Positions 448 through 64,000 are shown, numbered from the stretch's first letter. The stretch is DNA of 64,000 nt from IMGVR_UViG_3300044646_001937:62001-126000, one strand, 5' to 3'. Program-made: numbers and translations. The notes: generated by a model from the sequence alone, not told the origin.

Positions 448-1308
448 ATGAACACACAAGAACAAGCATATCTAAACGGGTTCATTAAAAAAGCTGCAAG
501 CTATGGTGTAGACGCAGATACTGCGTTTGCTATACTAAAGATGGCTAATGATGGTCCTCAGCTAATAAGTGGAGGTGGGAGTCTTATAAATTCGTCAACC
601 TCTAAACCAACGCCAGAACCAACAAGTTTAACTGGACTTAAAGGATCAGGTACAGGAATGATGGCTCCAGGAAACGGATTTGAAAGAGGGTTTAAAAACA
701 TGATGGAAAGCTTTAGACCTGCACCTAAACCTATCAGTGGTGGAAGCTCTTTTGCGTCAGCGCCAGCTCAGCAATCTGCAGCCCCTGCAGGACCTTCCAG
801 CAAACCAGGAACTGGCGGCCTGATAGATACGTCAGGAAAATTGACGCTTACACCTAATAGTCCAATCTCAACTACAACTCCGTTAATTCAAGGTGGCGCT
901 AGTACGTTTGCAAGCAATCAAGGAACTCTTCCCCAAGCCTCTACACCTAAACCTAGTCAGTCTGCAGCAGGCATGAATGAGGGGTTGGCTTCACATATGC
1001 ATCTTAATGAGTTGCCAGCACAACCAGCAGCACCAGCTCAACAACCGCAGCAACCAGCAGCTCAACCTAGCGCTGGACCTAGTGACGCTTTCTTAAGAAA
1101 GATTATGGGAAGCTATGATCCTAACAGTAAAGTAGACAGAGCTCAAGCAGATAGGGTGAGACAGTTATATGCTCAAGGCAAAACAACTGCAAAGGATATC
1201 TACGGTTCTCCTGAGTATCAAATAAACAGAGAAGCTCTAGGAGCTAGAAAAGGAGCCAACAGATCTGCGTATAGCGGATTAAAGCCTGCTCCTGGCATTC
1301 CTAGATAA
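448..1308 (+). CDS. low-complexity K-x-A motif protein (putative virion internal protein)
   Basis: 286 aa, P/Q/A/S/G rich; N-terminal AYLNGFIKKAASYG module resembles modules in 52565..55045. Confidence 0.7.
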   Translation: MNTQEQAYLNGFIKKAASYGVDADTAFAILKMANDGPQLISGGGSLINSSTSKPTPEPTSLTGLKGSGTGMMAPGNGFERGFKNMMESFRPAPKPISGGSSFASAPAQQSAAPAGPSSKPGTGGLIDTSGKLTLTPNSPISTTTPLIQGGASTFASNQGTLPQASTPKPSQSAAGMNEGLASHMHLNELPAQPAAPAQQPQQPAAQPSAGPSDAFLRKIMGSYDPNSKVDRAQADRVRQLYAQGKTTAKDIYGSPEYQINREALGARKGANRSAYSGLKPAPGIPR

Positions 1309-1325
1309 TCTAATATGATAAAAAG

Positions 1326-1356
1326 AAAAGACCTATCGAAAGGTAGGTCTTTTTTT
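1326..1356 (+). terminator. intrinsic terminator, probably bidirectional
   Basis: AGACCTATC-GAAA-GGTAGGTCT 9-bp stem, GNRA loop, 3' T-tract and 5' A-tract. Confidence 0.85.
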
Positions 1357-1368
1357 GTATAATAGTTT

Positions 1369-2907: not shown

Positions 2908-2957
2908 TTTTCTAGATAGGAATTGAAAATCATAGACGTATAATATAGTATATAGTG

Positions 2958-4721: not shown

Positions 4722-4763
4722 TATATAATACTATAAAACTAACAAACAACCAGGAGTAACGAT

Positions 4764-7211: not shown

Positions 7212-7251
7212 TATTTGCTGTAAAAGATTTCTTTTATGACTAGAATATATT

Positions 7252-9165: not shown

Positions 9166-9187
9166 TATAGTTTAATATTACAGCCAT

Positions 9188-12570: not shown

Positions 12571-12573
12571 TTT

Positions 12574-49278: not shown

Positions 49279-49279
49279 A

Positions 49280-50557
49280 TTATACGTAAGGTTGTAATTC
49301 TACTCTTGTTGGCATTTTTTCTTCCATATACTTGTCAGGATTTTCTCTCATCTCTTTTTTCAGCATATAGGTAAGATATGCTGAACCTGCTGCAGATCCT
49401 AGCAATCCTGTGGATGCTGCATCTAACGCATTGTTTATTGGGCTGGCTGCCATGAGCTTTTGTCCTATAGCTCCCAGTGACCTGCTTACTGAATCGTCAG
49501 AGATATCTACATCGTGAAGATTGTGGCGAGCAGTCTTATCAAATAATGCTGCGTGAGCTATACCATTGCAGAAGGCATCAATGCATGGAGTTTCAGCTTC
49601 CATATCTGAGGCTGTTTTGATTCTTGATAGTAAATCAATATAGTCTTTTTGTGCCTGCATAAGCTCTTGCTGTATTTGAGCTTTCTGCTGCATATAATAA
49701 TCTTTTTTAGCTTCTCTAAAACCTTCCTGTCCGCCGATTAGCATGCGTGCTGGATGTCTGCTTAGTGTATTGACTGCACGACCAATCATCCCCACATTTT
49801 CTTCAGCGTTTTTATCGCTAAGCATCATGTTCCTGAACCTTGCATCAGTGAGCATGTCTTCTCTGTTCTTACGATCATTCATCATGGTTTCGCGATCAGA
49901 GCGCTCTATAGCTTTGTCAATATCTCCGCCGACAAGTCCTCCTGCCAGAGCTCCTCCACCTGCAGCTAGTAATTTACCTACAACGCTTTTAGGAAGAGTG
50001 CCAAGCATTGCTCCTGCCGGAATGCCTAGGTATGAGCCTATGTTTCTTTTGATATGTCCTCCGACCCCACCCGATTCTTCAGGCTCAAACACATGCTCCC
50101 TGGATCCATCAAGGTGCTCAATTACGTTAGAGTGGCGTACACCTTTTCTTCCTGGTCCAGATTCCATCAAAGCGCCAGCCGCTGCTCCGGCTGCTGCTCC
50201 TGGCAACCCAGCAAATCCTCCTCCAGCTAATGCGCCAAGCAGCTTCAGTCTGTTTCTGTTTTCTCCTGTAGTTAATGAATAGCCTGGAGTGTAGCTGGTG
50301 GTCATCTCACCCTCGGGAGATTCAATTACAGAGTTTACTGCCTCTTGATATCTTGCAATTTTATGCTGAGGCATCAGCTCTTGAGGAATTGGAATTTTCA
50401 GCACATCAGAGGGATCTCCCTCAGGGTATGCCTTTCTTTTTTGCAAATCTTTTTCCCTAGCAAGCTGTAGTGCGCTAAAAAGACTTTTACCTAGCATTTT
50501 AGATGCTAGATAGCTTTCTTCGGGTGAGAGTGGAAGGTCTACTGCGCTTTTGTTCAT
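49280..50557 (-). CDS. K-x-A/glycine-zipper protein
   Basis: NKSA, HKIAR, IKTAS, DKTAR; several GxxxG helices. Confidence 0.6.
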   Translation of the reverse strand: MNKSAVDLPLSPEESYLASKMLGKSLFSALQLAREKDLQKRKAYPEGDPSDVLKIPIPQELMPQHKIARYQEAVNSVIESPEGEMTTSYTPGYSLTTGENRNRLKLLGALAGGGFAGLPGAAAGAAAGALMESGPGRKGVRHSNVIEHLDGSREHVFEPEESGGVGGHIKRNIGSYLGIPAGAMLGTLPKSVVGKLLAAGGGALAGGLVGGDIDKAIERSDRETMMNDRKNREDMLTDARFRNMMLSDKNAEENVGMIGRAVNTLSRHPARMLIGGQEGFREAKKDYYMQQKAQIQQELMQAQKDYIDLLSRIKTASDMEAETPCIDAFCNGIAHAALFDKTARHNLHDVDISDDSVSRSLGAIGQKLMAASPINNALDAASTGLLGSAAGSAYLTYMLKKEMRENPDKYMEEKMPTRVELQPYV

Positions 50558-50558
50558 A

Positions 50559-50936
50559 TTATTTAGCTGTTTCTTTTTTGCTTCCGTAGATGATAAACAC
50601 CCTGAAGCTTCCCTGAGTCGTCCATGTATCTTTCCATAGAGTTATCAGATATTTTTTGTTGTTCATAAGCTCATTCAGCATGTCCTGATCTTTTTGCTGT
50701 TCAGGATCTAGTATTATGTTTTTAAACACATAATCTGCCATCTCATCTTTTGATGCCCTCTTTTTGATTCCTTTAGCCTGCTCAAAAGCATCAATGATCT
50801 TTTCAGGATCAAATGCCTTATTGCTAACTTCGTTCTTAATGTTTCTTTTTGAAGAAGCAGAAAGATCAGACGAGCTAACACCAAAGTCAAAGTGTTCTGT
50901 GGCTTTGGTTTCTTTGTCTATGTTAATTAAGTCCAT
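50559..50936 (-). CDS. hypothetical protein
   Basis: 125 aa; KKRAS. Confidence 0.6.
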   Translation of the reverse strand: MDLINIDKETKATEHFDFGVSSSDLSASSKRNIKNEVSNKAFDPEKIIDAFEQAKGIKKRASKDEMADYVFKNIILDPEQQKDQDMLNELMNNKKYLITLWKDTWTTQGSFRVFIIYGSKKETAK

Positions 50937-51282
50937 GTTCTCTTTTAAGGTTTTCTGTTATGTGGCGCACAAGATTAATCTTTTCACGCTCGCGCGCAAG
51001 AGCATTGTTTACATCTTCTACGCTCTTGTCCATCTCATCCATAGATAATCCTGCCAGAGCTCCTCCAGTAAGCGAACCCTTCAAACCTGTTTCAACTGCG
51101 CCAGGAACCATATTTCCAAAATTTTTAAGCATGTCGGTAGTGATGAATGCTATCTTATGCACACCTTCTCCAGTATTGATGTTTTGTAATGCGCCTTCTA
51201 GCTCAATAAGCGAAGAACCTTTTTTGCTGAGTTCTTGCGCAAGCTGAGCTTTGATAGCTTTAGCATATTTAGTAAGTTCCAT
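50923..51282 (-). CDS. K-x-A/glycine-zipper small protein
   Basis: TKYAK, HKIAF, GSLTGGALAG. Confidence 0.6.
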   Translation of the reverse strand: MELTKYAKAIKAQLAQELSKKGSSLIELEGALQNINTGEGVHKIAFITTDMLKNFGNMVPGAVETGLKGSLTGGALAGLSMDEMDKSVEDVNNALAREREKINLVRHITENLKREHGLN

Positions 51283-51284
51283 AT

Positions 51285-51659
51285 TTAGTATTTTTTAACT
51301 GTAGAAATTCCAGTTTTGGGGTCGTAGTCTGTAAATTTTCTTTCTTGTAGTGTACTATACATTATATTGCCTAGACCAAACCCAGCCAAGCTCAATAATA
51401 ATCTACCTGGTCTGGAAATCTTTGAATAGGATGCAGCTGTATGTGCTATAGCTGCTCCAGCCGCACCTGCGAGCAACTGATCAAACGCCTCAGGAGAATT
51501 AAGCATATGCATGAGGCTTTTCTTTTTCTGGTCAGGCAACCCATGATCTTCTTTTATAAATTTAAAGATCTTTGAAGGGTGCTGCAATACATCGTCTCCA
51601 AACAGGTTTAACCCGTTTGCTACTGGTGTTGCTGCAGATGATAGTCCGAATATAGGCAT
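51285..51659 (-). CDS. small protein with glycine-zipper helices
   Basis: LAGAAGAAI, LSLAGFGLG. Confidence 0.6.
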   Translation of the reverse strand: MPIFGLSSAATPVANGLNLFGDDVLQHPSKIFKFIKEDHGLPDQKKKSLMHMLNSPEAFDQLLAGAAGAAIAHTAASYSKISRPGRLLLSLAGFGLGNIMYSTLQERKFTDYDPKTGISTVKKY

Positions 51660-51662
51660 AGA

Positions 51663-52562
51663 TTATTCTGTTCTAATAGCCCTGGCCGCTAGCGCTGGTA
51701 GAGACGCTGCACCTAGTGCAAGCGCCTCATCCCCTATCCGACTAGACAAAGGCTTGCGATTTCTTTCAATCTCTCTGTCTGGATTAATTGCATCCATCAG
51801 TTTGCTTGCTCCGTGAGTTCCAAGATAGGCGAGAATAGTGGTGTTTACAGGATTTTCACTAGCATAGTCTACAGCACCTGAGGCTAGATCTTGAGTGCCT
51901 TCTGTGAGACTTTTTAAATGACTAGCAAGATCGTTTGCATCCATGCCATGTCCAGTGCCTGTGTAAGGGTTATATGCAGCAGCTTTAAACTGATCTTTAG
52001 CTCCATCTAATAGAGCTGACGGATCAATCAGCATAGAATCTGTGGTAATTGGTGCTGGAGGTTCCTGGACAGTTTGCTGCTGAGATATTGGTGCAGCCTC
52101 TTGCGGTTGAGTTTTAGCCTGCATCATTTTCAGCTTCTGCATAAACTTTTTAGATGGACTATATCTCCAGTTCTGTCCTTGCTCATGCTGAAGCATAAAC
52201 GTAGGGTTTTCAGCTCCTGTAGCCAGTGTCATATAAATGTTGTCTGGACTTGCCCTGTGAATCTGCGCTGTACCCTTGTTGATCGCTCCCTCTTCAAAGT
52301 TGAGCATGTTGTCGTCTGCAAGCCTTGATATGGGTGTGTCTTCTGCAGGATACTCGCCAGGAAAGCCTCCAAAGCTATAGACAAGATTTCCATCAGACAG
52401 TCTTAGCCCATCTTTGGTTCTAACATATTTCCACTTAGCCTGGCTGCTGATGTTAGGAAGAATGTTTTCGTTAACAGGCATACTGTTTACGTCAAAAGAA
52501 GAAACCTTTTCTATCTCTTCTTTTATTCCAAGATAAAAAGCCGGTAGATCTAGAGCTATCAT
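51663..52562 (-). CDS. hypothetical protein, K-x-A group
   Basis: 299 aa; EKVSS, FKAAA. Confidence 0.6.
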   Translation of the reverse strand: MIALDLPAFYLGIKEEIEKVSSFDVNSMPVNENILPNISSQAKWKYVRTKDGLRLSDGNLVYSFGGFPGEYPAEDTPISRLADDNMLNFEEGAINKGTAQIHRASPDNIYMTLATGAENPTFMLQHEQGQNWRYSPSKKFMQKLKMMQAKTQPQEAAPISQQQTVQEPPAPITTDSMLIDPSALLDGAKDQFKAAAYNPYTGTGHGMDANDLASHLKSLTEGTQDLASGAVDYASENPVNTTILAYLGTHGASKLMDAINPDREIERNRKPLSSRIGDEALALGAASLPALAARAIRTE

Positions 52563-52564
52563 AA

Positions 52565-55045
52565 CTATTTAGCTGAAAGTACTGGGTTGGCTTTGTTGTG
52601 TGCAGCAGTCAAAGGATTACCAGCGTTGGCGCCTACACCGTAAGAATCTTTCCAGCTGTTCATAAGCTTAGGAAGAAAATGCTGTCCGGCTACTGCTCCA
52701 GCCATAGGAAGAAGTATAGATGAAATACCAGGACCATCATCGTCGTCATCGCTAAGGCCTCTGCTAATTGCAGAACCTAGGAGTGCTCCTCCTCCTGTAC
52801 CCAGCATAGAGTTAGACATGAATGGAACAATCCTATGTCTGTCGTTATTGAGCATATCATCAGACTCTTTGAGCATTCCTTCAATAAAAGCTTCGTTAGC
52901 TCCTTCTTTAACCAACTGCTCTCTGAAGCCTTCCCATGCTTTCAGATATGCTGCTATCTTTTCTGACTCTTCAAGCTCTTTTGCTTTTTTTGTTCTGCTC
53001 TCAAGAATTTTAGTCTCTGCTTGTTTATATAATTCGACCAAAGATTCGCTAAGCATTCCTCTTGCAAAAGCATCATCGACCCCTAGCTCTTCTGCCATTT
53101 TCTTAAAGCCACTCACGCTAAATTCAAGAATTGCGTCAAACTCTGCTGTTTTAGGAATTGCTGTTCCTCTGGATGCTTTTTCCTTTAGCCATGCATCTAC
53201 TGCTGCAGGAGATCCTCCTGCACTAATCATCTTGGCTCTTTCTCTTTCTTCTCCTGGCATTCTGCTGATAGATGCTTGAGCTTGAGCTGGTGTAATTGCT
53301 CCACTCCTAACTCCCTGGTTTAATACCTGAGCTCCCCTCTCATAGTGCGATGGTGTACGGGCTTTTTGTTGCGTACTGTCTTGTGGCTGTGAGTTTTCCT
53401 GGATGATTGTCTCGCTGGCAGCCTGTGTGGGAGGGTTAGTTTCTGTGGAAGCCTGGGGGTCAGCTGCGGCTGATGGTGATGTTTGCGCTGCAGGTGCGGC
53501 TGGTTGCTGCGCTTCTGGTTGTGCATTAATAACTGCACCTCTTGATGGCATGCCTGGTGATTTGGTGCCAATGGCACCGGCCCTAGAAGGCATCCTGCTT
53601 CCCCTGGATTGCGGTAGGGGCACATTTGAAATAATAGGCTGTCTACCATTATTTTGATACAGCTCATCTAGCTGCTGTGCATTGAGGGTGTGTGGTTGGG
53701 GCTGTTCTTCTGAGGACTGAGTGGCCTGTTGTGTTTGTGAGGGTTGTTGTGTTTGTGCGGGCTGCGTTCCAGGTTTTGCCTGAGCTGGCATGGCATTTAC
53801 CACACCCTGCGCGCCGGCTGCTACTCCTTGATTTGAGTCTGGCTGATTAAATCCTTTGTAAATATCTCTGACTGCATTAGCTCCTGTAAGCCCAGTTGCC
53901 AAGGGACTGGTAACCGGAGCAATTATTGGAAATACGCCACCTGCTCCGCTACTCAATCCGGCTAAGGTATCAATTCCTGCTCCAAGGTAATCATTGTCTT
54001 TGAATCTGTTGTATGCCGAGCCAAGGCTAAGACCTGACCCTACAAAAGGAATAGCTCTGGGGGCACTTTGAGCTAGAATTTTAGCTACAGCAGGCATTGC
54101 GGCTTGTCCTGTGGAAACTGCACCTTTTCCATAATTACCGTCAGAAAACTCATTCAATGCATTTAAACCTGCGGCTGCGCTACCCAAACCTGTAAGCACT
54201 TTTCCTGCAGTGCCGACACCCTTAGCTAGGTTGCTAGCGCCAGGAGCGGGTGATCCTCCTGCAGGTGGAACTCCGCCGCCGCCAGTGGGGGGAGTTGGTG
54301 GCGCTCCTCCGCCTCCTTGACCTGCCCTAGCGGCATTGAATTTGTTGACCACATTGTTGGCCATGTTCTTTGCTCCCTGCCAAGCATTGGTAGCCTTTTG
54401 CTTTACTCCACCCACAAAGTTGCCAGCTGCTGAAGTTGGTTGAGGTGCTGCTTGTGGGTTTGTTGGGTTAGCCTGTGGAAGACCAGCCCTGGCAGCAGGT
54501 GCTGCTTGTGCAGGAGACGACTCTATGTCGATGACCTGGTTGTTTAGCTTTGGACTATTAGTCTTTGCGCCTGCTGTTCCTTTTGAGGGTGAAATAACCT
54601 CGTCTGGAGTGAGCACCTTTGTGGCTTGAGCTTCTGTGGTGGTGTTGTGAAGCCTTGGACTGTTTGCTTGTGATGCTGAGGAAGAGCTTGCTGGGGGGAC
54701 TACGTTAGCATTCCTGGGTACAATAGCGTTGGGCTTTACCTTTGGAGCTCTTTTTGTGTTCTTTGGGGCACTCTTTCCTGCTCCTGGGGTTGTTGCGTTC
54801 TGAGGTGCTGGAGGAGTTTTTGGCTTCAGCTTGACCTCTTGAGGATACGACTGAGAGTTGTAGCCCTTCTGGAACTCTTGAGCTTTCTGTCTGATTCCTT
54901 GCATGAACTTTCCGAACTGATCCTGAGGAAGACCCATTGCCATCTTTGTTGCAGCCTCTTTGCTCATCCCCAGCCCTACTGCTTCGTCCACGAAGCCGTC
55001 GATCATGCTTTGAAAGATTTCTTTTTCCTGTAGGTTGCTGCTCAT
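52565..55045 (-). CDS. large low-complexity K-x-A protein with membrane-type helices (ejection-protein-like)
   Basis: 826 aa; KEAA, KMAM, KTAE, KMAE, KQAE, KIAA; IPFVG...DYLGAGID helical hairpin. Confidence 0.65.
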   Translation of the reverse strand: MSSNLQEKEIFQSMIDGFVDEAVGLGMSKEAATKMAMGLPQDQFGKFMQGIRQKAQEFQKGYNSQSYPQEVKLKPKTPPAPQNATTPGAGKSAPKNTKRAPKVKPNAIVPRNANVVPPASSSSASQANSPRLHNTTTEAQATKVLTPDEVISPSKGTAGAKTNSPKLNNQVIDIESSPAQAAPAARAGLPQANPTNPQAAPQPTSAAGNFVGGVKQKATNAWQGAKNMANNVVNKFNAARAGQGGGGAPPTPPTGGGGVPPAGGSPAPGASNLAKGVGTAGKVLTGLGSAAAGLNALNEFSDGNYGKGAVSTGQAAMPAVAKILAQSAPRAIPFVGSGLSLGSAYNRFKDNDYLGAGIDTLAGLSSGAGGVFPIIAPVTSPLATGLTGANAVRDIYKGFNQPDSNQGVAAGAQGVVNAMPAQAKPGTQPAQTQQPSQTQQATQSSEEQPQPHTLNAQQLDELYQNNGRQPIISNVPLPQSRGSRMPSRAGAIGTKSPGMPSRGAVINAQPEAQQPAAPAAQTSPSAAADPQASTETNPPTQAASETIIQENSQPQDSTQQKARTPSHYERGAQVLNQGVRSGAITPAQAQASISRMPGEERERAKMISAGGSPAAVDAWLKEKASRGTAIPKTAEFDAILEFSVSGFKKMAEELGVDDAFARGMLSESLVELYKQAETKILESRTKKAKELEESEKIAAYLKAWEGFREQLVKEGANEAFIEGMLKESDDMLNNDRHRIVPFMSNSMLGTGGGALLGSAISRGLSDDDDDGPGISSILLPMAGAVAGQHFLPKLMNSWKDSYGVGANAGNPLTAAHNKANPVLSAK

Positions 55046-56822: not shown

Positions 56823-56824
56823 AT

Positions 56825-59800
56825 ATGCCGAATAAGAGCCACAAGTATGTTTTGGACAATGGGAAGTTGAAGAAAGTTCTTGGAACCACCAAAGCCAAGT
56901 ACAGCATTCCAGACCCATCATCCTTTTTCAGCCCTGTTACAAATCTGATTCCAGGTATCAGTTCTGTGTCTGGTGCTCGCGTATTGATTGGAGACAAGTC
57001 ATCCCTCCAGGCAATGACCCTGGTAAACAGAGAGGCTCCGCTGATACAGTCGGCCCCTAAGAACGTAAAAGGCGTAACCACCGAGAGCTTCAGCAAGCAG
57101 TTCGGTAAGCTTGTAACCGTAAACGCTAAAGCTGACGGAACAGTTACCAAGATAGACGAAGACCATATTGTGATCAAAGACAAGCTGAGTAAGCTTCATG
57201 AACACGACCTCTATAACAACTATATTGTAGGAAGAGAAAGCTACCTACACCACACTCCTGTGGTTAAGGTTGGAGACAAGGTCAAAGCTGGAGACCTCCT
57301 AGCCACATCGAACTATTCTGATGGTAAGGGTATGCTTGCTCTTGGTATGAACCTCAAGACAGCTATCATGCCCTACAGATCTCTTAACTTTGAAGATGCT
57401 CTGGTTATTTCCGAGACAGCAGCAAAGAAACTAGAGGGAGAGCAGCTGATTCCTGTACGCATGGAAATTGCTAGAGGGATGATAGTAGACAAAGACCAGT
57501 ACGTCTCGATGTTCCCTAATAAATTCTATAACGAGCAGTTGTCTAATATTGCTAGCAATGGTGTGGTCAAAAAAGGAACAGTATTGAACCATGGAGATCC
57601 AGTGATTCTAGCCTGCCAGCCTAAGTCGCTTAAATCTCTAGATATTCAGTTGGGTAATTTGTCTAAAGCTGTAAAGAATGCGTTCTCAGACGTAGGAACC
57701 ATCTGGGAGTATGAATATCCTGGTGAAGTCACAGACGTATCGGTCACATCAAAGCTAATAGCTGTTACGGTTAAGACAAAAAGACCTATGAGCTATGGAG
57801 ACAAACTAAACATGCCGTTCGGAGCAAAAGGCGTTGTACACATTGCTCCTGATACACAGATGCCCCAGGGAGAAGACGGCAAACCTGTAGATGTATTGCT
57901 CAACACTATGAGTATTACCTCTCGCGTTGCTCCAGGATTGGTAAATACTATCGGGCTAGGTAAGCTGGCAGAAAAGAAAGGAAAGGCCCTGAACATGTCG
58001 GGCTTTACCGAAGGTTCCGCAGTCCAAAAGGTGGCCGATGTTTTGGCTAAGAACAATATTAAAGATACCGAGAAACTGTATGATCCTATTTCAGGCAAAC
58101 ATATTGATGTGATGACAGGTCCGCTATACTTCAACAGATTACATCATATTGCCGAAGATAAAATATCTACAAGATCGGCAGCAACCACCTACGACATTAA
58201 CATGCAGCCCTCTAAAGCAGGATCGCATGAAAAAGCTAAACGTCTAGGTAATCTGGCTACCACCGTAGCACTATCAAACGACGCTAAAGCCGTACTTAGA
58301 GATGTTGCCACAGTCAGAGCCACAAAGAATGACGAGTTTTGGACAGCCTTGAAACTAGGGCATGCTCCACCTCCACCAAAAACCCCATTCATATTTGAGA
58401 AGTTCCTAAGCCACCTCAAAGGCTCTGGAGTGAATGTGGTTCAAGACGGTTCTAAGTTTCATATCATGCCTCAAACAGATAAAGATGTTGTAGCACTTTC
58501 ACAAGGAGCAATTACAGAACCTCTAGGCTACAAACTTAAAAAAGATGCACTCATGCATGAAGAAGGAGGACTTTTTGATCCTACACTCACAGGCATTCAT
58601 GGCAACAACTACAATCATGTGGAGTTAAATCATAAAATCCCAAACCCGATGGCTGAAGAGCATCTCAGAAAATTACTGAAGATGACTAAGGCAGCATATG
58701 ATGACGCTATCGCATCAGGAGAATTAGAGAATAAGCTTAAGGCTATGAATCTGGACGATAAGATCACAGAGCTAAAGCAATTGGTAGCGTCCAAGAGAAA
58801 ATCAGGCAGAGATGACGCTATTAAAGCTCTAAGCTTCCTGACAATGCTTAAAGAAAAAAACCTAAAGCCTGACGACATGATGCTCTCAAAGCTGGCGGTA
58901 ATTCCTGCCCAGTATAGACCTGTAATGGTTCAGGGAAATCAGACTCTGACCGCAGACGTGAACGAGCTCTATAAGGACGTGATGCTGGTTAACAAGTCAT
59001 ATGGAGAAGCCAAAGATTCTCCAGACATAGACAAGGAACATTTAACTGAAGCAAAAAAGCAAATCTATGCAGGAGTCAAAGCTGTCTATGGTTTGGGTGA
59101 ACCTATTAAGCAAAAAAGTGTAGAAAAGAACTACAAAGGCTTATTAGCATCGGCTTTAGGTTTGCAAGGCGGATCAGCCAAAGAATCTATGTTTCAGGCA
59201 AAGGTGGTAAACAAGCCTATTGATCTTGTAGGCAGAGCAGTGTTGCTTCCTGACTCTAAATTAGACTTGAATCAGGCTAGTATTCCTCAGCAGGTAGCAT
59301 GGAGTATCTATTCTCCTTTTGTTATTCGCAGATTGGTAAGACAAGGCATACCAGCCACCAAAGCCAGAGAATATTTAGACAACAAGCATCCTCTGGCACT
59401 GTCAGCACTACAGGACGAGATGACAGATCGCCCAGGCATTGTTACCAGAGATCCGCAACTTTCAAAGTACAACTTTCAGGGTATGTACCTAAAAATGAAT
59501 CCTGATCCAAAGGACTTTTCGATTAAATTAAATCCTTTGGTGTTTAAGGGGTATGGCGGAGACAGTGATGGTGACCAGCTTAACGTACAGCTACCAGCTA
59601 GTGAAGACGCAAAAGAGGAAGTTAAAGAGAAATTGCTTCCTGAAAAGAATCTTATCTATCACAGAACATTTAGTCCAATATTCACACCATCCAACGAAGC
59701 TGCTACCGGTTTATTCGCTGCAAGTTTTGAAGATAATAAGAATACTCCTAAGAAATACAGCTCTCCCCAGGACGTGGTTAAAGATTTTTTAGCAGGAAAG

Positions 59801-59830
59801 CTTGATGTTGGTGACAGAGTAGAGTTATAA
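56825..59830 (+). CDS. fusion of RNAP beta C-terminal part and beta' N-terminal part (catalytic subunit)
   Basis: beta motifs NFEDA, GDKL....G.KGV, RLHHIAEDK; beta' motifs NHVEL, VIPAQYRP, DLVGRAV, TRDPQL, GGDSDGDQ. Confidence 0.93.
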   Translation: MPNKSHKYVLDNGKLKKVLGTTKAKYSIPDPSSFFSPVTNLIPGISSVSGARVLIGDKSSLQAMTLVNREAPLIQSAPKNVKGVTTESFSKQFGKLVTVNAKADGTVTKIDEDHIVIKDKLSKLHEHDLYNNYIVGRESYLHHTPVVKVGDKVKAGDLLATSNYSDGKGMLALGMNLKTAIMPYRSLNFEDALVISETAAKKLEGEQLIPVRMEIARGMIVDKDQYVSMFPNKFYNEQLSNIASNGVVKKGTVLNHGDPVILACQPKSLKSLDIQLGNLSKAVKNAFSDVGTIWEYEYPGEVTDVSVTSKLIAVTVKTKRPMSYGDKLNMPFGAKGVVHIAPDTQMPQGEDGKPVDVLLNTMSITSRVAPGLVNTIGLGKLAEKKGKALNMSGFTEGSAVQKVADVLAKNNIKDTEKLYDPISGKHIDVMTGPLYFNRLHHIAEDKISTRSAATTYDINMQPSKAGSHEKAKRLGNLATTVALSNDAKAVLRDVATVRATKNDEFWTALKLGHAPPPPKTPFIFEKFLSHLKGSGVNVVQDGSKFHIMPQTDKDVVALSQGAITEPLGYKLKKDALMHEEGGLFDPTLTGIHGNNYNHVELNHKIPNPMAEEHLRKLLKMTKAAYDDAIASGELENKLKAMNLDDKITELKQLVASKRKSGRDDAIKALSFLTMLKEKNLKPDDMMLSKLAVIPAQYRPVMVQGNQTLTADVNELYKDVMLVNKSYGEAKDSPDIDKEHLTEAKKQIYAGVKAVYGLGEPIKQKSVEKNYKGLLASALGLQGGSAKESMFQAKVVNKPIDLVGRAVLLPDSKLDLNQASIPQQVAWSIYSPFVIRRLVRQGIPATKAREYLDNKHPLALSALQDEMTDRPGIVTRDPQLSKYNFQGMYLKMNPDPKDFSIKLNPLVFKGYGGDSDGDQLNVQLPASEDAKEEVKEKLLPEKNLIYHRTFSPIFTPSNEAATGLFAASFEDNKNTPKKYSSPQDVVKDFLAGKLDVGDRVEL

Positions 59831-59873
59831 ATGTACAGGCACAATAGTCTTTATTTTTATAACTTTTTAGTTT

Positions 59874-60074
59874 ATGCTTGATGAAAATATATGGATGCAA
59901 CTCAGCGAAGATGAAAAATTTGCAGAGTTACAGACGTATTTAAATACTATAATTAAAATAGATGAAGGCCTGCATGAGCTAAGTCATACCCCAGAGCAAG
60001 GAAAGCTTGCCTGTATGAAAAAAGAACTGCAGTCAAAAGTTTTTAAAATAATAGAAATAGAAAACGCAATATGA
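59874..60074 (+). CDS. small helical hypothetical protein
   Basis: 66 aa; 4-nt overlap with the next gene. Confidence 0.55.
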   Translation: MLDENIWMQLSEDEKFAELQTYLNTIIKIDEGLHELSHTPEQGKLACMKKELQSKVFKIIEIENAI

Positions 60075-60961
60075 AAGTATCTGAACTAATCAACTCCTAC
60101 AGCAGTATAGTTAAAGTGGCTGAAGCAAATAAACTCACGCAGAAGAGCGTGAAGCAGGCCTTTGTCGCCAATCCAAATGTGCCCCCTCCACAACCCGGTC
60201 AACCAGTACAGCAGGCACTACCTCCAGGACAGCAAGATCCACAGCAGCAGGCTGCAGCCCAACAGCAAGCTCAAGCGGCACCAGAACAACAAGCTGCACC
60301 ACAACAGGCAGCTCAGCCTGGCCCGCAGGTAACGCAATTAATGCAGCTTGTACAGCAGCTACCTCCAGAAATGCAGCAGCAGATTGGCGGCGCACTGCAG
60401 CAGCTACAGCAAATGCCTCCCCCTCAGCAGGAGCAGACAGCAGGTCAGCTAATACAGCAAATCTCTGCAAGCATGCAGCAACAGCAGGCACCTCAGCAGG
60501 CACCCGCACAACCACCACAAGCACCTCAACAGCCACAGGCGGCTCCTCAGCCAATGGAAGCACAGGCAGGACTTGAGGAAGATCTTTATGCTGCATCACA
60601 AGGCATGCAGCAACCTCCTCAGGATCCATCACAACAGATGCCACCCCAACAACAAGACCCAGCAGCAGAAGATGCGGCGCAGGCAGAGCAATCAGCCATT
60701 GAAGCCAAAAACGAGTTAGATAATGTTAAAGTAACCCTATCAGTTAGAGAACTACTTGATCTGGTAGGTAAGGGTTCCGCCACAGCATCATTATTGAAGG
60801 TCAAGCAGCTGGCCGACACACATCAGCAAAAGATGGAACAGACAAAGCAGAAAGCCGAAGCTGATCAGCAGAAGGCTCAAGCACAGCAACAGCAGCAACA
60901 ACAAGCAGACCAGCAAGGCATGATGGGCGGAGGCATCTACCCAACACCGATGGGTACGTAA
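60071..60961 (+). CDS. Gln/Pro/Ala-rich disordered K-x-A protein
   Basis: 296 aa; KVAE, KQAF; long Q-rich tract. Confidence 0.7.
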   Translation: MKVSELINSYSSIVKVAEANKLTQKSVKQAFVANPNVPPPQPGQPVQQALPPGQQDPQQQAAAQQQAQAAPEQQAAPQQAAQPGPQVTQLMQLVQQLPPEMQQQIGGALQQLQQMPPPQQEQTAGQLIQQISASMQQQQAPQQAPAQPPQAPQQPQAAPQPMEAQAGLEEDLYAASQGMQQPPQDPSQQMPPQQQDPAAEDAAQAEQSAIEAKNELDNVKVTLSVRELLDLVGKGSATASLLKVKQLADTHQQKMEQTKQKAEADQQKAQAQQQQQQQADQQGMMGGGIYPTPMGT

Positions 60962-60971
60962 TTTTCAAGAT

Positions 60972-61382
60972 ATGCCAGACTACTCTAAACTAGCGGCCTT
61001 CTTAAATTCTTTTGATGTCCTTGACCCAGGATATGACGCAGTCTCTTTTATTAAAGAGAAGATTGCCCAGGATCTACAGGATGCAAACACAATTAACAAT
61101 GGCGATGAAGAAGATCTTCAAGATAACGACATCACCATGTCTACACCAGAACAGCAGGATAACGAGAACGTTGAAGGCAAGGAGATGGAAGGGGCCTTTA
61201 AAGAACTTGAGGCGTTAAATCAGATAGATGAGGAGAAGAAGGAAGTCATTAAGCCCAAAGAGCAGTCCACCTATTCTGCAATGCAAACAGATTTTCCGTC
61301 TGTTTCGGTGCTTGGCAATCATCCCAATATCAACAAGCAAGCTTCGTTATTTACATTGTTGCAGAAAAAACTTAAAGCATAA
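60972..61382 (+). CDS. acidic K-x-A protein
   Basis: 136 aa; EKIAQ, NKQAS; TAATG overlap with beta'-C. Confidence 0.65.
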   Translation: MPDYSKLAAFLNSFDVLDPGYDAVSFIKEKIAQDLQDANTINNGDEEDLQDNDITMSTPEQQDNENVEGKEMEGAFKELEALNQIDEEKKEVIKPKEQSTYSAMQTDFPSVSVLGNHPNINKQASLFTLLQKKLKA

Positions 61383-63232
61383 TGGCTGTAACTACCACAG
61401 GACAGGTATTGTTGAAGTTCTTCCTACCTCAACAATTTCATAATCTAGTTCAGGATGTCATTTTAGATAAAAAGGGCATCTCTAAGCTTTTTGCAGAATT
61501 AGCGGAAAAGGCTCCTGAAGAATATAGTAAAATTGTATCAGATCTTACTAGATTAGGTTTCGAGATTGCTACAAGACAAGGTACGTCTATTACTTTAAAA
61601 GATCTAATCTCTCCCATCAATAAAGATAAAGAGTGGGATGAGTTTGAAAAATTTAAAGAAGAAACAGAAAAGTCAAACGACTCAAAAAGCATTAAAGACA
61701 ATAAGATCTTTAATAAATACAACGACATGATGTCTAGTATTGAAAAAGATCTATTGAATAAGGGTCTTGCTGATAATAAGTCATTGGCTAAGATTATCAT
61801 GGCAGGATCCCGAGGTTCTCCAGCACAATACAGAGGAACAATTGCAACACAGGGAATCGTAGTGGATGCAGAGGGTAAGCCTAAAATGGATCTACCTATT
61901 AAAAGTTCTTATGCTGAAGGCTTATCTTTACCAGAATATTTAGCTACTTCGTTTGGTACTAGGTCTGGGGAAGTGTTAAAAAAGATTAGTGTGGCGCAGG
62001 GCGGGTATGGCTCCAAGCAATTTGCAAGAGCGCTAATGCCTCTACAGGTAGTAGAGGCAGACTGCGAAACAATGAACGGTATCAGTGTTTCTGTAGACGA
62101 CAAAGAATCAGCAGGGTCCTATCTAGCCAAAGGAGTGTTAGACTATAATAGGAATAACGAAGTGACATTAAAAATGCTCAACGATCTTAGAAATAAGAAA
62201 GTTGAGAAGATTGTTATTCGTACACCCATGACATGTCAGTCTAACAAAAAACATCACTCAGGTGGTTTGTGTCAGATGTGTGTAGGTAAAAGAGAAAAGG
62301 GAATGGCAGCAATGGACAGCTATGTAGGTCTGGTGGCAGGTACGGCTGTAGCGGAACCATTAACAGAAAGCGCGATGAAGGCCAGACATTCAGGAGGCGC
62401 AGCCACGTCACTAGGAGGACAATCAGGCTTTAAGCTAATCAATCAGCTGGCCAACGTACCTAAGACATTTGTAGGCAGAGCCCCCCTAGCTCAAGAGGAC
62501 GGATTTGTTACTAAAGTAGAGAAAGCTGACGCTGGAGGTTACTTTATAACCGTGAATAATGAAGAGCATTATATTGGGATTGATCAGGAACCTAAAGTAC
62601 AGCAAGGAGACAGAGTAGAACAGGGACAGGTATTAAGTACAGGTCTTGTAGATCCTAGAGAGGTTGTAAAATATAGAGGAATTGGAGACGGGCGTAAGTA
62701 TTATATGGAGGCAATGAAGAAAGCATTCGACGACAGCAGTCTTCCTGTAAATCGCAGAAATTTTGAGCTGATTGCGAAAGCTGCTGTAGATCATGTCAAA
62801 ATCACAGACCCCGAAGGTATAGGTAATTATCTTCCAGATCAGGTGGTGTCATACTCAGCTATTGAGAAAGACTATAACCCCAGAAGTAACTCTAAGATGC
62901 TTAGGATAGATATGGCCTATGGTAAATATATGGAGAAACCTGAGCTTCACTACACCATTGGCACCAGAGTTACCTCCGCCGTAATCAGAGATCTCAAAGA
63001 ACATGAGATTGAATCTGTACTGGTTAACGATCAACCCCCCAACTTTGAACCAGTAATGGTACGTCTGGTGGACGTACCAGAGCATCATGAAGACTGGATG
63101 CATGTATTAAACAGCACCAACCTCGCAAAAAGGTTTGTAAATATGGTCAACAGAGGATCTACATCAGACACAAAAGGCCCTAGCCCTATACCTGGGTTAG
63201 CTATGGGTGTTGGGTTTGGACAGAAAGATTAA
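61382..63232 (+). CDS. RNA polymerase beta' subunit, C-terminal fragment
   Basis: TTGQ, GSRGS, PIKSSYAEGL, bridge helix GTRSG...GGY, Zn site C..TC..CQMC, trigger loop EPLTESAMKARHSGG. Confidence 0.92.
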   Translation: MAVTTTGQVLLKFFLPQQFHNLVQDVILDKKGISKLFAELAEKAPEEYSKIVSDLTRLGFEIATRQGTSITLKDLISPINKDKEWDEFEKFKEETEKSNDSKSIKDNKIFNKYNDMMSSIEKDLLNKGLADNKSLAKIIMAGSRGSPAQYRGTIATQGIVVDAEGKPKMDLPIKSSYAEGLSLPEYLATSFGTRSGEVLKKISVAQGGYGSKQFARALMPLQVVEADCETMNGISVSVDDKESAGSYLAKGVLDYNRNNEVTLKMLNDLRNKKVEKIVIRTPMTCQSNKKHHSGGLCQMCVGKREKGMAAMDSYVGLVAGTAVAEPLTESAMKARHSGGAATSLGGQSGFKLINQLANVPKTFVGRAPLAQEDGFVTKVEKADAGGYFITVNNEEHYIGIDQEPKVQQGDRVEQGQVLSTGLVDPREVVKYRGIGDGRKYYMEAMKKAFDDSSLPVNRRNFELIAKAAVDHVKITDPEGIGNYLPDQVVSYSAIEKDYNPRSNSKMLRIDMAYGKYMEKPELHYTIGTRVTSAVIRDLKEHEIESVLVNDQPPNFEPVMVRLVDVPEHHEDWMHVLNSTNLAKRFVNMVNRGSTSDTKGPSPIPGLAMGVGFGQKD

Positions 63233-63309
63233 CCTGTTACGGAACAAGAAGGTTCTTGATATACAAGTAGAAAGTTTATAAAATTGATTTAAATCTAAGA
63301 TAATTTACT

Positions 63310-64000
63310 ATGCGCAAAACAACTCTTAAAAAACAGGCAGCAGACGACCAGATCGAGGGAGCCTTTTTCCAGCTTGCCTACCAAAGACTGCAAGATACTC
63401 TTAAAAATCTTATTCCTTATCTTGTAGGATTTGAAATTGTTAAGAAAAACCCAGAGAATACAAAAGCCCTGGGCGTCTTTGGGTTTAGGTCAAAAAATGG
63501 ACAGATTTTGTTTGTACCTGCCTTTTTCATTAATGGTAAAGTAAAGAACCTGGATTTGCTTTATAGTAAGAACAATGAACAGTTCTACCCCCTAAACGAA
63601 GATTTTGCAGAAATGTTCATTAAAGATGAACTTTTGGGGTTGGGTGAAAACTCTAACGAAAACAGGACTTCAGTCATGCGCGATGCCTCCCAGGGAGACT
63701 ATCGTCAGATGGCTATTCCTCCCAGAACAGGTAGATATGCTATCGCCTCTGTTTTGGATTATGTGGAAAACTCAGATAACAAGACCAAGAAAGCTTTCAC
63801 AGAGCTTATTGAAAAAGACGCTGAGTTCTGTGAGTCACTGCTGAGATTTTACCCTCTTGAGAAAGTAGCAAAAGCTATTGCCCTTGAAGATGGTAAAGAG
63901 TATCGCAAATCAGACCAGGCCGCAAAGAAGATCGAACTGGTTAAGATGAAGGATAAGGAAAAGGTTAAAAAGTTAAACGATTCTCAAAAGTCCACCCTCA
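63310..64000 (+). CDS. 3'-truncated K-x-A protein (not in ORF track)
   Basis: Open to window end: MRKTTLKKQAADDQIEGAFFQLAYQRL...GFEIV...ALGVFGF...VPAFFING. Confidence 0.75.
   Translation, partial: MRKTTLKKQAADDQIEGAFFQLAYQRLQDTLKNLIPYLVGFEIVKKNPENTKALGVFGFRSKNGQILFVPAFFINGKVKNLDLLYSKNNEQFYPLNEDFAEMFIKDELLGLGENSNENRTSVMRDASQGDYRQMAIPPRTGRYAIASVLDYVENSDNKTKKAFTELIEKDAEFCESLLRFYPLEKVAKAIALEDGKEYRKSDQAAKKIELVKMKDKEKVKKLNDSQKSTL

What the first reader, a model, noticed from the sequence alone, without database searches (positions are those of the whole stretch)
448..63339. Recurrent K-x-A signature and GF helical module across about a dozen unrelated low-complexity proteins
Seen: K-x-A(A/S) sits near N-termini or domain borders in 448 (KKAA, KMA), 1369 (KEA, KKAE, KIA), 48352 (KNAA, KKAA), 49280 (KSA, KIA, KTAS, KTA), 50559 (KRAS), 50923 (KYA, KIA), 51663 (KAAA), 52565 (six sites), 60071 (KVA, KQA), 60972 (KIA, KQAS) and 63310 (KQAA). 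A module (A/S)xxxGFxxxAxxxG recurs: AYLNGFIKKAASYG, MIDGFVDEAVGLG, SVSGFKKMAEELG. Many of these ORFs carry glycine-zipper helices. Known: T4 and phiKZ prohead proteases cut many internal head proteins at a short shared motif. Inference: a head-packaging and cleavage code for a set of ejected proteins, with Lys/Ala specificity unlike the Glu-specific T4/phiKZ enzymes. K-x-A is short and will also occur by chance.
Basis: partly seen in the sequence, partly recalled or inferred. Interest (0 to 1): 0.75.

Follow-up and report, generated by a model that had tools for sequence, protein, structure and literature searches.

The report
Jumbo-phage head cargo tag and cut-site
An uncultured 204-kb phage and its many relatives put the same 35-residue helical tag on a changing set of small proteins and on a head-assembly protein, and keep a short Lys-x-Ala motif in their head-assembly proteins, which most likely marks proteins for loading into the capsid and for cutting by the head protease.

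Summary
The window is bases 62,001-126,000 of a complete 204,454-bp jumbo phage.

**GF module.** It is a conserved 35-residue helix-turn-helix hairpin.
- It starts 8 small genes, one of them in the window (448-1308).
- It ends an ATP-grasp enzyme.
- It occurs twice inside a "hub" protein encoded between the prohead protease and the capsid gene.
- It is found in 663 unannotated protein clusters.
- Between related genomes only the tag aligns, not the cargo. This is the pattern of the T4 capsid-targeting sequence.

**K-x-A.**
- It is not enriched by composition alone.
- As a conserved motif at exactly this spacing it is about 5 times over expectation.
- All of the excess lies in seven proteins: the prohead protease, a scaffold-like protein, four other head-region proteins (window ORFs 60972 and 63310 among them) and one protein encoded near the terminase gene.
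- The capsid protein has the motif only at its N-terminus.
- The cultured relative Arash shows the same bias.

**Best reading.** A gp21-fold protease cuts at [LIMV]-x-K-x-A, and the hairpin addresses cargo to the prohead. Neither cleavage nor packaging has been shown.

Most of the dozen listed window ORFs lack the module.

The parts
1..446 (+). 3' part of a 228-aa GF-tagged gene (genome 61760-62446). Its tag lies just upstream of the window. It has a glycine-zipper segment and a Pro-rich tail.
448..1308 (+). 286-aa protein. Its first 35 residues (448-552) are the canonical GF tag, with K14-K-A16 and K31-M-A33. The rest is low-complexity Pro/Ser/Gln/Ala sequence.
   Evidence: it is P0100
1369..2907 (+). 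512-aa protein with an HELGH zinc-protease-like motif and a C-terminal DUF5661. Its N-terminal 138 residues are paralogous to the N-terminus of a 1203-aa structural-region protein. It has no GF module.
47692..48348 (-). N-terminal fragment of the RNA polymerase beta subunit (context). It matches residues 36-222 of Arash gp206, which is abundant in Arash virion preparations.
48352..49278 (-). 308-aa conserved core gene. It has a 20-residue N-terminal leader ending in a conserved K-x-A, after which the orthologues diverge. It has glycine-rich segments.
49280..50557 (-). 425-aa conserved core gene with two glycine-zipper segments and a conserved K-x-A at residues 3-5.
50559..50936 (-). 125-aa conserved gene. 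Its K-R-A site is not conserved in relatives.
50923..51282 (-). 119-aa conserved gene with conserved K5-Y-A7 and K43-x-A45.
51285..51659 (-). 124-aa conserved gene with glycine/alanine-rich hydrophobic segments.
51663..52562 (-). 299-aa conserved gene. Its N-terminal leader resembles that of 48352 and ends in K-x-S here and K-x-A in the relatives.
52565..55045 (-). 826-aa low-complexity protein with three glycine-zipper segments. Residues 319-397 are paralogous to a head-module gene next to the protease.
54908..55030 (-). Divergent GF-like hairpin at the N-terminus of the 826-aa protein.
53024..53149 (-). Divergent GF-like hairpin, internal copy 1 of the 826-aa protein.
52844..52966 (-). Divergent GF-like hairpin, internal copy 2 of the 826-aa protein. 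It is conserved in the orthologues of two related genomes.
56825..59830 (+). RNA polymerase beta C-terminal part fused to the beta' N-terminal part (context). K-x-A is at expectation here.
60071..60961 (+). 296-aa Gln/Pro-rich protein with a conserved K28-Q-A30 just before the low-complexity part.
60972..61382 (+). 136-aa acidic protein with three conserved K-x-A sites (residues 6, 30 and 122): 3 observed against 0.13 expected.
61382..63232 (+). RNA polymerase beta' C-terminal part (context).
63310..64000 (+). 5' part of a 736-aa gene that runs on to window coordinate 65520. It is a homologue of the Arash structural protein gp218. It has nine conserved K-x-A sites against 2.4 expected.

Best explanation
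Two linked head-assembly signals.

(1) The GF module as a targeting domain.
- The GF module is a 35-residue helix-turn-helix hairpin with consensus M-N-T-x-E-Q-A-Y-x-x-G-F-V-K-R-A-x-E-Y-G-x-S-x-x-E-A-x-x-L-L-K-x-A.
- It serves as a capsid-targeting or docking domain.
- A hub protein carries two or three copies. Its gene lies between the prohead protease gene and a scaffold-like gene, just upstream of the capsid gene.
- A fast-changing set of small genes, and some enzymes, carry one copy at the N-terminus. These proteins are thereby co-assembled into the prohead, as T4 internal proteins are through their capsid-targeting sequence.

(2) K-x-A as the protease cut site.
- The gp21/assemblin-fold prohead protease recognises [LIMV]-x-K-x-A, usually followed by S, E, A or G.
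- It cuts the capsid protein's N-terminal 26 residues.
- It cuts the tag, at K14-x-A16 and K31-x-A33, which frees the cargo.
- It cuts N-terminal leaders of several conserved proteins.
- It cuts at many sites in itself and in scaffold-like proteins, which are thereby cleared from the head.

What is shown:
- the module family and its architectures
- the gene order
- the variable cargo
- the spacing-specific conservation of K-x-A and where it is concentrated
- the protease fold

What is inferred:
- that the motif is a cleavage site, and on which side of it the cut falls
- that the tag loads proteins into capsids
- that the cargo is ejected into the host
For: GF module:
- It is paralogous in 8 N-terminal copies, in the C-terminus of an R2K ATP-grasp protein, in two copies in the hub, in an 81-aa ORF and in a 139-aa head-module gene.
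- The profile finds 663 clusters at E <= 1e-3 and 211 at E <= 1e-10. They have two architectures: residues 1-35 on unrelated C-termini, or 2-3 internal copies.
- The gene order protease, hub, scaffold-like, 130-aa, tagged 139-aa, 165-aa, capsid is repeated on unrelated contigs and in two related genomes.
- Related genomes of 190-198 kb each hold 8-9 matches to the module, including a cluster of 4-5 tagged genes in which only the tag aligns between genomes.
- T4 precedent: internal proteins are diverse and share only the capsid-targeting sequence (PMC3012670).
- In the AF2 model of the hub, module 1 lies in a confident four-helix domain and module 2 is a confident hairpin.

K-x-A:
- Conserved K-x-A in three genomes numbers 111 against 54 expected. 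It is second of all a-x-b pairs, after the collagen pair G-x-T.
- Seven proteins hold 64 of these sites against 11.6 expected. The rest of the proteome is at background.
- Only the +2 spacing is enriched: 16 against 2.25, p 2.6e-9.
- In 115 protease homologues, K and A of K-x-A are 0.95 and 0.87 conserved, against 0.66 and 0.62 for other K and A. Conserved K followed by conserved A at +2 occurs 9 times against 1.3 expected, and 0-2 times at other spacings.
- In 121 scaffold-like homologues, all 12 sites are kept while the middle residue varies. The +2 count is 11 against 2.2 expected.
- The capsid protein has the motif only at residues 3-5 and 24-26, conserved at 0.97 and 0.99.
- The Arash capsid protein keeps a K-x-A just upstream of the same conserved N-terminal stretch.
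- In Arash, gp220, gp222, gp223 and gp225 are enriched. Tail, portal and RNA polymerase are not.
- Codon usage at the sites is ordinary, so selection acts on the protein.

Protease:
- PHROG 'head maturation protease' at E 2.4e-9.
- T4 gp21 is the top structural match at Z 7.4 over 140 residues; the next match is Z 4.1.
- Known relatives also read the residues two apart, at P3 and P1: I/L-x-E in T4 (PMC12991175) and A-x-E in SPN3US, which also cuts itself (PMC10052503).
Against: - No proteomic or biochemical datum shows a cut at K-x-A or a tagged protein in a virion. The clade is uncultured.
- Six of the protease's twelve sites and many sites in ORF 63310 lie in regions modelled as folded. Either many sites are not cut, or those proteins are fully degraded.
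- The cargo parts of 89 tagged proteins are not specifically depleted of K-x-A: 76 against 99 expected, but control spacings give 78-91.
- The complex prediction of the tag with capsid protein, hub and scaffold-like protein gave no answer.
- In Arash the K-x-A-rich proteins were detected with 80-100% peptide coverage in virion preparations. This does not fit complete removal, though that preparation also contained many non-structural enzymes.
- Foldseek alone gave no significant match for the protease model.
- The gene set used in the first conservation test was chosen after I had looked at the alignments. The genome-wide ranking and the family tests do not depend on that choice.
Confidence: 0.55

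Rival explanations
1. K-x-A is a conserved contact or structural motif of the scaffold network, not a cleavage site. For example, it could be a short strand that docks on the capsid protein or on another core protein. On this reading the GF hairpin is simply the oligomerisation unit of the scaffold.
For: - Many sites lie inside regions modelled as folded.
- The K-x-A-rich Arash proteins are seen at high coverage in virion preparations.
- Cargo is not specifically depleted of the motif.
Against: - The motif occurs in proteins of unrelated sequence, including the protease itself.
- It lies at the extreme N-terminus of the capsid protein and at the ends of leaders after which orthologues diverge.
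- A fixed i/i+2 pair with a free middle residue is what related proteases read (PMC12991175, PMC10052503).
Confidence: 0.2
2. The GF tag addresses proteins to something other than the capsid. Candidates are a membrane or envelope site (together with the glycine zippers), a host factor, or the R2K ATP-grasp ligase as a handle for peptide modification. The head-module copies would then be a separate use of the same hairpin.
For: - The tag is fused to an R2K ATP-grasp enzyme here, and to ATP-grasp plus HExxH domains in relatives.
- Glycine-zipper segments often sit just before the module.
- The complex prediction did not place the tag on capsid, hub or scaffold-like protein (which counts neither for nor against).
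Against: - The hub and a tagged 139-aa gene lie inside the head-morphogenesis block in every genome examined.
- The tag carries two copies of the motif that marks head proteins.
- The variable-cargo locus copies the T4 internal-protein pattern (PMC3012670).
Confidence: 0.17
3. Both features are chance products of Lys/Ala-rich, helix-prone low-complexity sequence.
For: - Composition-only tests show no significant K-x-A excess in the named ORFs.
- The profile matches to solved structures are idealised designed helical repeats.
Against: - The profile finds 663 clusters in 1.84 billion proteins, with E down to 1e-31.
- The conservation is specific to the +2 spacing in three independent protein families and in a relative with about 30% identity.
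Confidence: 0.03

Closest known systems
Phage T4 capsid-targeting sequence (CTS) of the internal proteins, with prohead protease gp21
   Same: - A conserved N-terminal leader sits on a diverse, fast-changing set of small proteins.
- The leader carries the protease's motif.
- The protease has the same fold (Z 7.4 to 5jbl).
- Scaffold and protease themselves are rich in sites.
- The motif reads the residues two apart, at P3 and P1.
   Different: - The leader here is a folded hairpin of about 35 residues, not a peptide of about 10, and shows no detectable sequence relationship to the T4 one.
- The same module is also repeated inside a head-module hub protein and fused to enzymes.
- The proposed site is K-x-A rather than I/L-x-E.
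- Nothing is shown experimentally.
phiKZ / SPN3US / 201phi2-1 head maturation (gp175 / gp245; cuts after S/A/G-x-E) with packaged RNA polymerase and ejection proteins
   Same: - A jumbo phage with a split multisubunit RNA polymerase whose homologue in a relative is abundant in virion preparations.
- Many candidate head proteins have N-terminal propeptide-like leaders.
- The protease is expected to cut itself.
   Different: - Relatedness is only distant (nearest cultured relative: Arash, about 30% identity).
- The capsid protein is small (319 aa).
- The motif has Ala, not Glu, at the last fixed position.
- The GF tag is not found in cultured phage records by tblastn.
Herpesvirus assemblin and its scaffold
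   Same: - The protease fold class is the same.
- Cleavage after Ala, commonly before Ser (V/L/I-x-A then S; from my own knowledge). This resembles K-x-A followed by S/E/A.
- Cleavage releases the scaffold from its capsid-binding end (PMC8537868).
- The protease has internal self-cleavage sites.
   Different: - Here protease and scaffold are separate genes.
- Lys replaces the hydrophobic residue at the first fixed position.
- A hydrophobic residue sits two places further upstream.
- The resemblance in specificity is an inference from motif statistics only.
P22-type scaffolding protein C-terminal helix-turn-helix coat-binding domain
   Same: - A small helix-turn-helix hairpin, placed at the extreme C-terminus in many hub homologues.
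- It could be the element that holds on to the capsid shell.
   Different: - There is no sequence relationship.
- The P22 hairpin is basic, while this one is net acidic (from my own knowledge of P22).
- P22 has no protease.
- Binding to the capsid protein was not supported or refuted here.

Membership tests
T4 gp21 / HK97 gp4 / herpesvirus assemblin-fold prohead serine proteases (genome 133187-134629, outside the window) | Sequence match to a curated head-maturation-protease family | tested here: met
   PHROG 18299 'head maturation protease', E 2.4e-9, residues 64-215. There is no Pfam hit and no sequence hit in the Protein Data Bank.
T4 gp21 / HK97 gp4 / herpesvirus assemblin-fold prohead serine proteases (genome 133187-134629, outside the window) | Assemblin-like fold of the catalytic domain | tested here: met
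   VIA-align places T4 gp21 (5jbl_B) first: Z 7.4, rmsd 3.8 A, 140 of 164 residues, next match Z 4.1. Foldseek alone was not significant, and the model's mean pLDDT is only 68.6.
T4 gp21 / HK97 gp4 / herpesvirus assemblin-fold prohead serine proteases (genome 133187-134629, outside the window) | Catalytic His and Ser in equivalent positions | tested here: inconclusive
   Invariant H104 and S155 in 32 homologues are candidates. I did not verify residue-level superposition on gp21 H85/S140.
T4 gp21 / HK97 gp4 / herpesvirus assemblin-fold prohead serine proteases (genome 133187-134629, outside the window) | Gene placed in the head-morphogenesis block next to scaffold and capsid genes | tested here: met
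   Order protease, hub, scaffold-like..., capsid in this genome and its relatives.
T4-type capsid-targeting-sequence system | Shared N-terminal leader on otherwise unrelated small proteins in a variable locus | tested here: met
T4-type capsid-targeting-sequence system | Leader is necessary and sufficient for encapsidation | not testable with these tools
   This needs reporter fusions and purified particles. The complex prediction gave no answer.
T4-type capsid-targeting-sequence system | Leader removed by the prohead protease at its consensus site | not testable with these tools
   The tag holds two nearly invariant K-x-A sites. Cleavage itself has not been observed.
T4-type capsid-targeting-sequence system | Sequence homology to the T4 CTS | not tested
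   I made no comparison with the T4 leader. The PHROGs scan of two tagged proteins and of the hub found no family.
phiKZ-like (S/A/G-x-E) head maturation | Cleavage motif ending in Glu | tested here: not met
   The conserved, spacing-specific pair is K-x-A. E-x-A and other pairs are not comparably enriched.
Pfam / PHROGs / solved-structure families, for the GF module | Significant match to any described family | tested here: not met
   No Pfam hit and no PHROGs hit. The matches to solved structures are all designed helical repeats. Names in the sources are all 'hypothetical protein'.

The most novel reading that the evidence does not exclude
An abundant, uncultured clade of roughly 190-290-kb phages uses a modular addressing system not described before.
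- One folded 35-residue hairpin serves as the repeated unit of a scaffold hub.
- The same hairpin serves as the 'postcode' on a hypervariable set of cargo genes, including ATP-grasp ligases and metalloproteases.
- It is coupled to an assemblin-fold prohead protease whose specificity (Lys at P3, Ala at P1) is unlike any characterised phage head protease and close to the herpesvirus Ala-Ser rule.
Probability: 0.4. Interest if true: 0.8.

Novelty: new variant of a known kind. Interest (0 to 1): 0.68.

Why it matters
If the reading holds, several things follow.
- It gives a sequence rule ([LIMV]-x-K-x-A) and a portable 35-residue tag. Together they predict, from sequence alone, which proteins of a large uncultured phage clade are loaded into the capsid and where they are trimmed.
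- It assigns a role to 663 clusters of "hypothetical" proteins.
- It points to a variable locus of probably injected effectors, which are candidate anti-defence proteins, as in T4.
- It adds a head protease specificity that resembles the herpesvirus enzymes. This bears on the shared origin of these proteases.
- It bears on host immune sensors that detect phage head proteases through their cleavage motifs (PMC12991175).
- The tag could also be used to load foreign proteins into capsids, as the T4 CTS is.

Tried and rejected
- **Composition-only K-x-A enrichment in the named ORFs:** not significant. I would have closed the motif as chance had I stopped there.
- **Pfam and PHROGs on the named ORFs and the tagged proteins:** nothing for the module. 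Only weak EF-hand/dockerin-like hits on a loop in the hub.
- **Megablast and tblastn against cultured phage records:** no match to the tag or the hub. Only distant RNA polymerase relatives appeared.
- **IMG/VR scan with ORF 49280:** nothing.
- **Solved-structure sequence search with the module profile:** only designed helical repeats.
- **ESM Atlas look-ups:** no informative neighbours.
- **Complex prediction:**
I left it out and did not send it to any other remote tool.
  - The accepted job gave "no answer", which counts neither way.
- **Depletion of K-x-A in cargo regions:** inconclusive, because control spacings were equally low.
- **DNA-level explanation of the motif:** rejected, because codon usage at the sites is ordinary.
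- **A second leader type (48352 and 51663):** found in no other gene.
- **Plain HMM search for GF copies in ORF 52565:** failed. Only the profile-profile comparison supports them.

Full report
**Where the window lies**

The window is bases 62,001-126,000 of a 204,454-bp virus record with direct terminal repeats, rated 100% complete. I placed the whole genome in the script box and called ORFs crudely.

No cultured phage matches at the DNA level. The nearest cultured relatives by the RNA polymerase subunit are Salmonella phage Arash and some Vibrio phages, at about 30% identity.

The capsid protein, the protease and the scaffold-like protein each have 200 or more homologues, down to about 50-70% identity among the 120 listed for each. 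Many sit on metagenomic contigs of 170-290 kb, and every name the sources give is "hypothetical" or uninformative. So this is a large, uncultured jumbo-phage clade.

**Checking K-x-A the simple way**

Against each protein's own composition:
- The 11 named ORFs hold 45 K-x-A against 32.4 expected, a ratio of 1.39. The rest of the proteome has 1.11.
- K-x-A ranks 11th of 276 a-x-b pairs.
- Sites cluster in the first 40 residues (14 against 5 expected; 9 of 11 named ORFs against 40 of 163 others). But these ORFs had been picked for that property.

On this evidence the motif is not distinguishable from chance.

**The GF module is real and much larger than reported**

An all-against-all BLAST of the proteome showed that the first 33-45 residues of ORF 448 are shared with a series of small genes just upstream of the window. 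A profile search of all six frames found these copies in the genome:
- eight N-terminal copies in genome 58,987-63,308, two of them in ORFs my crude caller had missed
- one copy at the C-terminus of a 417-aa R2K-type ATP-grasp protein (Pfam PF18299)
- one at the start of a 139-aa gene in the head block
- one in an 81-aa ORF
- two inside a 376-aa protein, which I call the hub

The consensus is M-N-T-x-E-Q-A-Y-x-x-G-F-V-K-R-A-x-E-Y-G-x-S-x-x-E-A-x-x-L-L-K-x-A.

A profile of 12 copies, searched against 1.84 billion representative proteins, found 663 clusters at E <= 1e-3 and 211 at E <= 1e-10. They have two architectures:
- A single copy at residues 1-35, in front of unrelated C-terminal parts of 30 to 760 residues. 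These include an HExxH-plus-ATP-grasp protein and another HExxH protein.
- Two or three internal copies in proteins of 200-540 residues that share acidic N-terminal motifs with the hub.

None of these proteins has a name or a Pfam domain. PHROGs, Pfam and solved structures give nothing beyond designed helical repeats, which fits an idealised helix-turn-helix hairpin. Cultured phage records have no match.

An alignment of those segments with their orthologues matches the tag profile in register (hhalign probability 90%, E 1.6e-6, 36 columns). I count them as probable divergent copies. The remaining named ORFs have no copy.

**Genomic setting of the module**

- The hub gene lies directly after the prohead protease gene (PHROG 18299, E 2.4e-9).
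- After the hub come a 299-aa coiled-coil, scaffold-like gene, a 130-aa gene, the tagged 139-aa gene, a 165-aa gene and the 319-aa capsid gene. The capsid gene is a homologue of the Arash capsid protein and gives a weak PHROG major-head hit.
- The same order is found on two unrelated short contigs and in two related genomes that I fetched whole.
- Five related records each contain the module (9, 8, 7, 7 and 1 matches). The three largest records show the same layout of hub, two small head-block genes and a cluster of tagged small genes.
- Between genomes the tagged genes align only over the tag, while the capsid protein is 93-97% identical.

An AlphaFold2 model of the hub puts module 1 inside a confident four-helix domain (residues 89-167, pLDDT above 93). 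Module 2 is a confident hairpin (residues 300-341, pLDDT about 91).

**K-x-A revisited through conservation**

Aligning N-termini with the orthologues from the two related genomes showed K-x-A kept at the end of short conserved leaders, after which the sequences diverge. Four tests followed.

1. Set-based test.
   - Set: 16 proteins of the head block and the window cluster that have orthologues in both relatives.
   - Identically conserved K-x-A in the first 40 residues: 16 sites against 2.25 expected (p 2.6e-9). It is the top a-x-b pair.
   - Control spacings: K-A, K-xx-A and K-xxx-A are at expectation.
   - The other 100 proteins: 9 against 4.6.
   - I chose that set after seeing the alignments, so I also ran an unbiased genome-wide ranking.
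2. Genome-wide ranking.
   - Conserved K-x-A is the second most over-represented pair, 111 against 54. Only G-x-T of the collagen-like fibres is higher.
   - Seven proteins carry 64 of those sites against 11.6 expected:

     | Protein | Conserved sites | Expected |
     |---|---|---|
     | 353-aa protein near the terminase gene | 11 | 1.0 |
     | 503-aa head-block protein | 11 | 1.9 |
     | prohead protease | 12 | 2.5 |
     | scaffold-like protein | 12 | 2.6 |
     | window ORF 60972 | 3 | 0.13 |
     | window ORF 63310 | 9 | 2.4 |
     | 130-aa head-block protein | 6 | 1.2 |

   - Without these seven, the proteome is at background.
   - The extended pattern is [LIMV]-x-K-x-A-[SEAG]-[DE].
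3. Protein families.
   - Protease, 115 homologues at 48-99% identity: K and A of K-x-A are 0.95 and 0.87 conserved, against 0.66 and 0.62 for other K and A. A conserved K column is followed by a conserved A column at +2 nine times against 1.3 expected, and 0-2 times at every other spacing.
   - Scaffold-like protein, 121 homologues: all 12 sites are kept, ten of them at 0.97 or more, while the middle residue varies. The +2 count is 11 against 2.2 expected.
   - Capsid protein, 119 homologues: the only K-x-A sites are K3-x-A5 and K24-x-A26 (0.97 and 0.99 conserved). There is none in the remaining 290 residues.
4. Phage Arash.
   - K-x-A is enriched in gp220 (10 against 3.0), the protease homologue gp222 (7 against 3.2), gp223 (8 against 3.0) and gp225 (7 against 1.8). 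It is not enriched in tail, portal or RNA polymerase proteins.
   - The Arash capsid protein keeps a K-x-A just upstream of the same conserved N-terminal stretch (local script only).

Two further points:
- Codon usage at the sites is ordinary, so the constraint is on the protein.
- RNA polymerase subunits, portal, giant proteins and tail-region proteins of this genome are at expectation.

**The link between the two features**

The tag itself contains two of these sites. K14-R-A16, usually followed by S-E, is invariant. K31-x-A33 at its end is nearly invariant.

**The protease**

An AlphaFold2 model built on 32 homologues is of moderate quality (mean pLDDT 68.6). Foldseek alone found nothing significant. 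In the second-look alignment, T4 gp21 is the top match, well above the rest: Z 7.4, 140 of 164 residues, next match Z 4.1.

Enzymes of this fold read two residues spaced by one:
- I/L-x-E in T4 (PMC12991175)
- A-x-E in SPN3US, which also cuts itself and whose propeptides hold several motif copies (PMC10052503)
- from my own knowledge, V/L/I-x-A followed by Ser in herpesviruses, whose scaffold is released from the capsid protein by such a cut (architecture in PMC8537868)

**Interpretation**

The most economical reading is as follows.
- K-x-A is the recognition motif of this clade's prohead protease.
- The proteins densest in sites (protease, scaffold-like protein, the 503-, 353- and 130-aa proteins) form the core that has to be degraded and cleared.
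- The capsid protein loses a short N-terminal piece.
- Tagged cargo is loaded through the hairpin and then freed by cuts in or after it.
- The window's conserved minus-strand cluster (48352-55045) and the two small genes between the polymerase genes (60071, 60972) are candidates for packaged proteins with short cleavable leaders. The grounds are:
  - they lie next to genes for RNA polymerase subunits, whose Arash homologues gp206 and gp216 were among the most abundant proteins in the virion preparation
  - they are conserved and syntenic in relatives
  - several have conserved N-terminal K-x-A
  - they carry glycine-zipper-like segments, as the hub does
  - ORF 52565 shares a segment with a head-block gene

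That they are ejected into the host is inference only.

**Weak points**

- Nothing here shows a cut or a packaged protein.
- Many sites lie in regions modelled as folded.
- Cargo is not specifically depleted of the motif.
- The complex prediction was uninformative.
- The Arash proteomics detected K-x-A-rich proteins at high coverage, in a preparation that also contained many enzymes.

I put 0.55 on the combined model. It is higher for [quoted passage not shown] and lower for "the cut is exactly after the Ala".

**Comparison and novelty**

In logic this works like the T4 CTS/gp21 system and the phiKZ-type propeptide system. The protease passes the sequence, fold and gene-context tests for the gp21/assemblin class.

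It differs in four ways:
- the targeting element is a folded hairpin
- the hairpin is also the repeat unit of a hub protein and is fused to enzymes
- the element has no detectable relative in Pfam or PHROGs, and no natural relative among solved structures
- the inferred specificity is Lys/Ala rather than Glu

I therefore file it as a new variant of a known kind.

Noticed in passing
window 54705-56327 (-) and 52565-55045 (-): A 540-aa ORF overlaps the start of the 826-aa ORF by 341 bases. Relatives conserve only its residues 4-427. In one relative the homologous match ends two bases from the start of the next gene. The last 113 residues here look like read-through of a lost stop or an assembly frameshift.
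   Followed up: partly
window 47692-48348 (-), 39825-40517 (+), 56825-59830 (+), 61382-63232 (+): The multisubunit RNA polymerase is cut in an unusual way. There are two separate small genes for the beta N-terminal region, a fusion of the beta C-terminus with the beta' N-terminus, and a separate beta' C-terminal gene. In Arash the first three are one 1525-aa protein.
   Followed up: partly
window 2955-12570 (+) and 46328-46828 (-): Five consecutive large fibre-like genes have long G-A-T-G-x-x collagen-like runs and shared domains, plus a 166-aa protein with the same repeat at its C-terminus. These produce the top-ranked conserved pair G-x-T.
   Followed up: no
window 42831-45395 (-): An 854-aa protein contains an uninterrupted run of about 45 glycines (residues ~593-633).
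   Followed up: no
window 12574-33566 (+): A long block of same-strand genes with lower G+C (0.34-0.39). I did not examine them.
   Followed up: no
window 1369-2907 (+); genome 149155-152766: The HELGH protein shares its first ~138 residues (32% identity) with the N-terminus of a 1203-aa coiled-coil-rich protein in the structural region. This may be a second shared N-terminal addressing element. Its C-terminus is DUF5661.
   Followed up: partly
L005:10455-10652 (genome 60455-60652); relatives P0025, P0008, P0034 and the G2 orthologue of window ORF 51663: A second small mobile element, C-W-E-G-Y-E-x-V-P-G-K-x-P-Y-S-x-D-S-C-R-P-K, follows the tag in a 65-aa protein. It turns up in otherwise unrelated proteins of relatives.
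   Followed up: no
L005:11398-11751 (genome 61398-61751): In one gene the tag is not N-terminal. A 43-residue element starting M-P-F-K-S-N-A-Q-R-R-W-M-Y-A-N-E-P-E-M-A-K-K-W precedes it. The same arrangement recurs in database hits P0020, P0066 and P0084.
   Followed up: no
L006:9687-10817 (hub, residues 165-189) and hits P0043, P0105, P0140, P0145: An EF-hand/dockerin-like loop, D-V-D-K-D-G-K-I-E-A-S-D-L, occurs in the hub and directly after the tag in several tagged proteins. Pfam hits are weak (E 0.005-0.03).
   Followed up: partly
L005:4105-6696 (genome 54105-56696): An 863-aa protein with KTSC and MazG-like domains lies just upstream of the tagged-gene cluster. It resembles the multi-domain 'polyvalent' proteins of phages (from my own knowledge).
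   Followed up: no
L010:6591-7652 (genome 193591-194652): A 353-aa protein of unknown function, encoded near the terminase large subunit gene, has the highest density of conserved K-x-A in the genome (11 against 1.0 expected). It may be a further core or scaffold component encoded away from the head block.
   Followed up: partly
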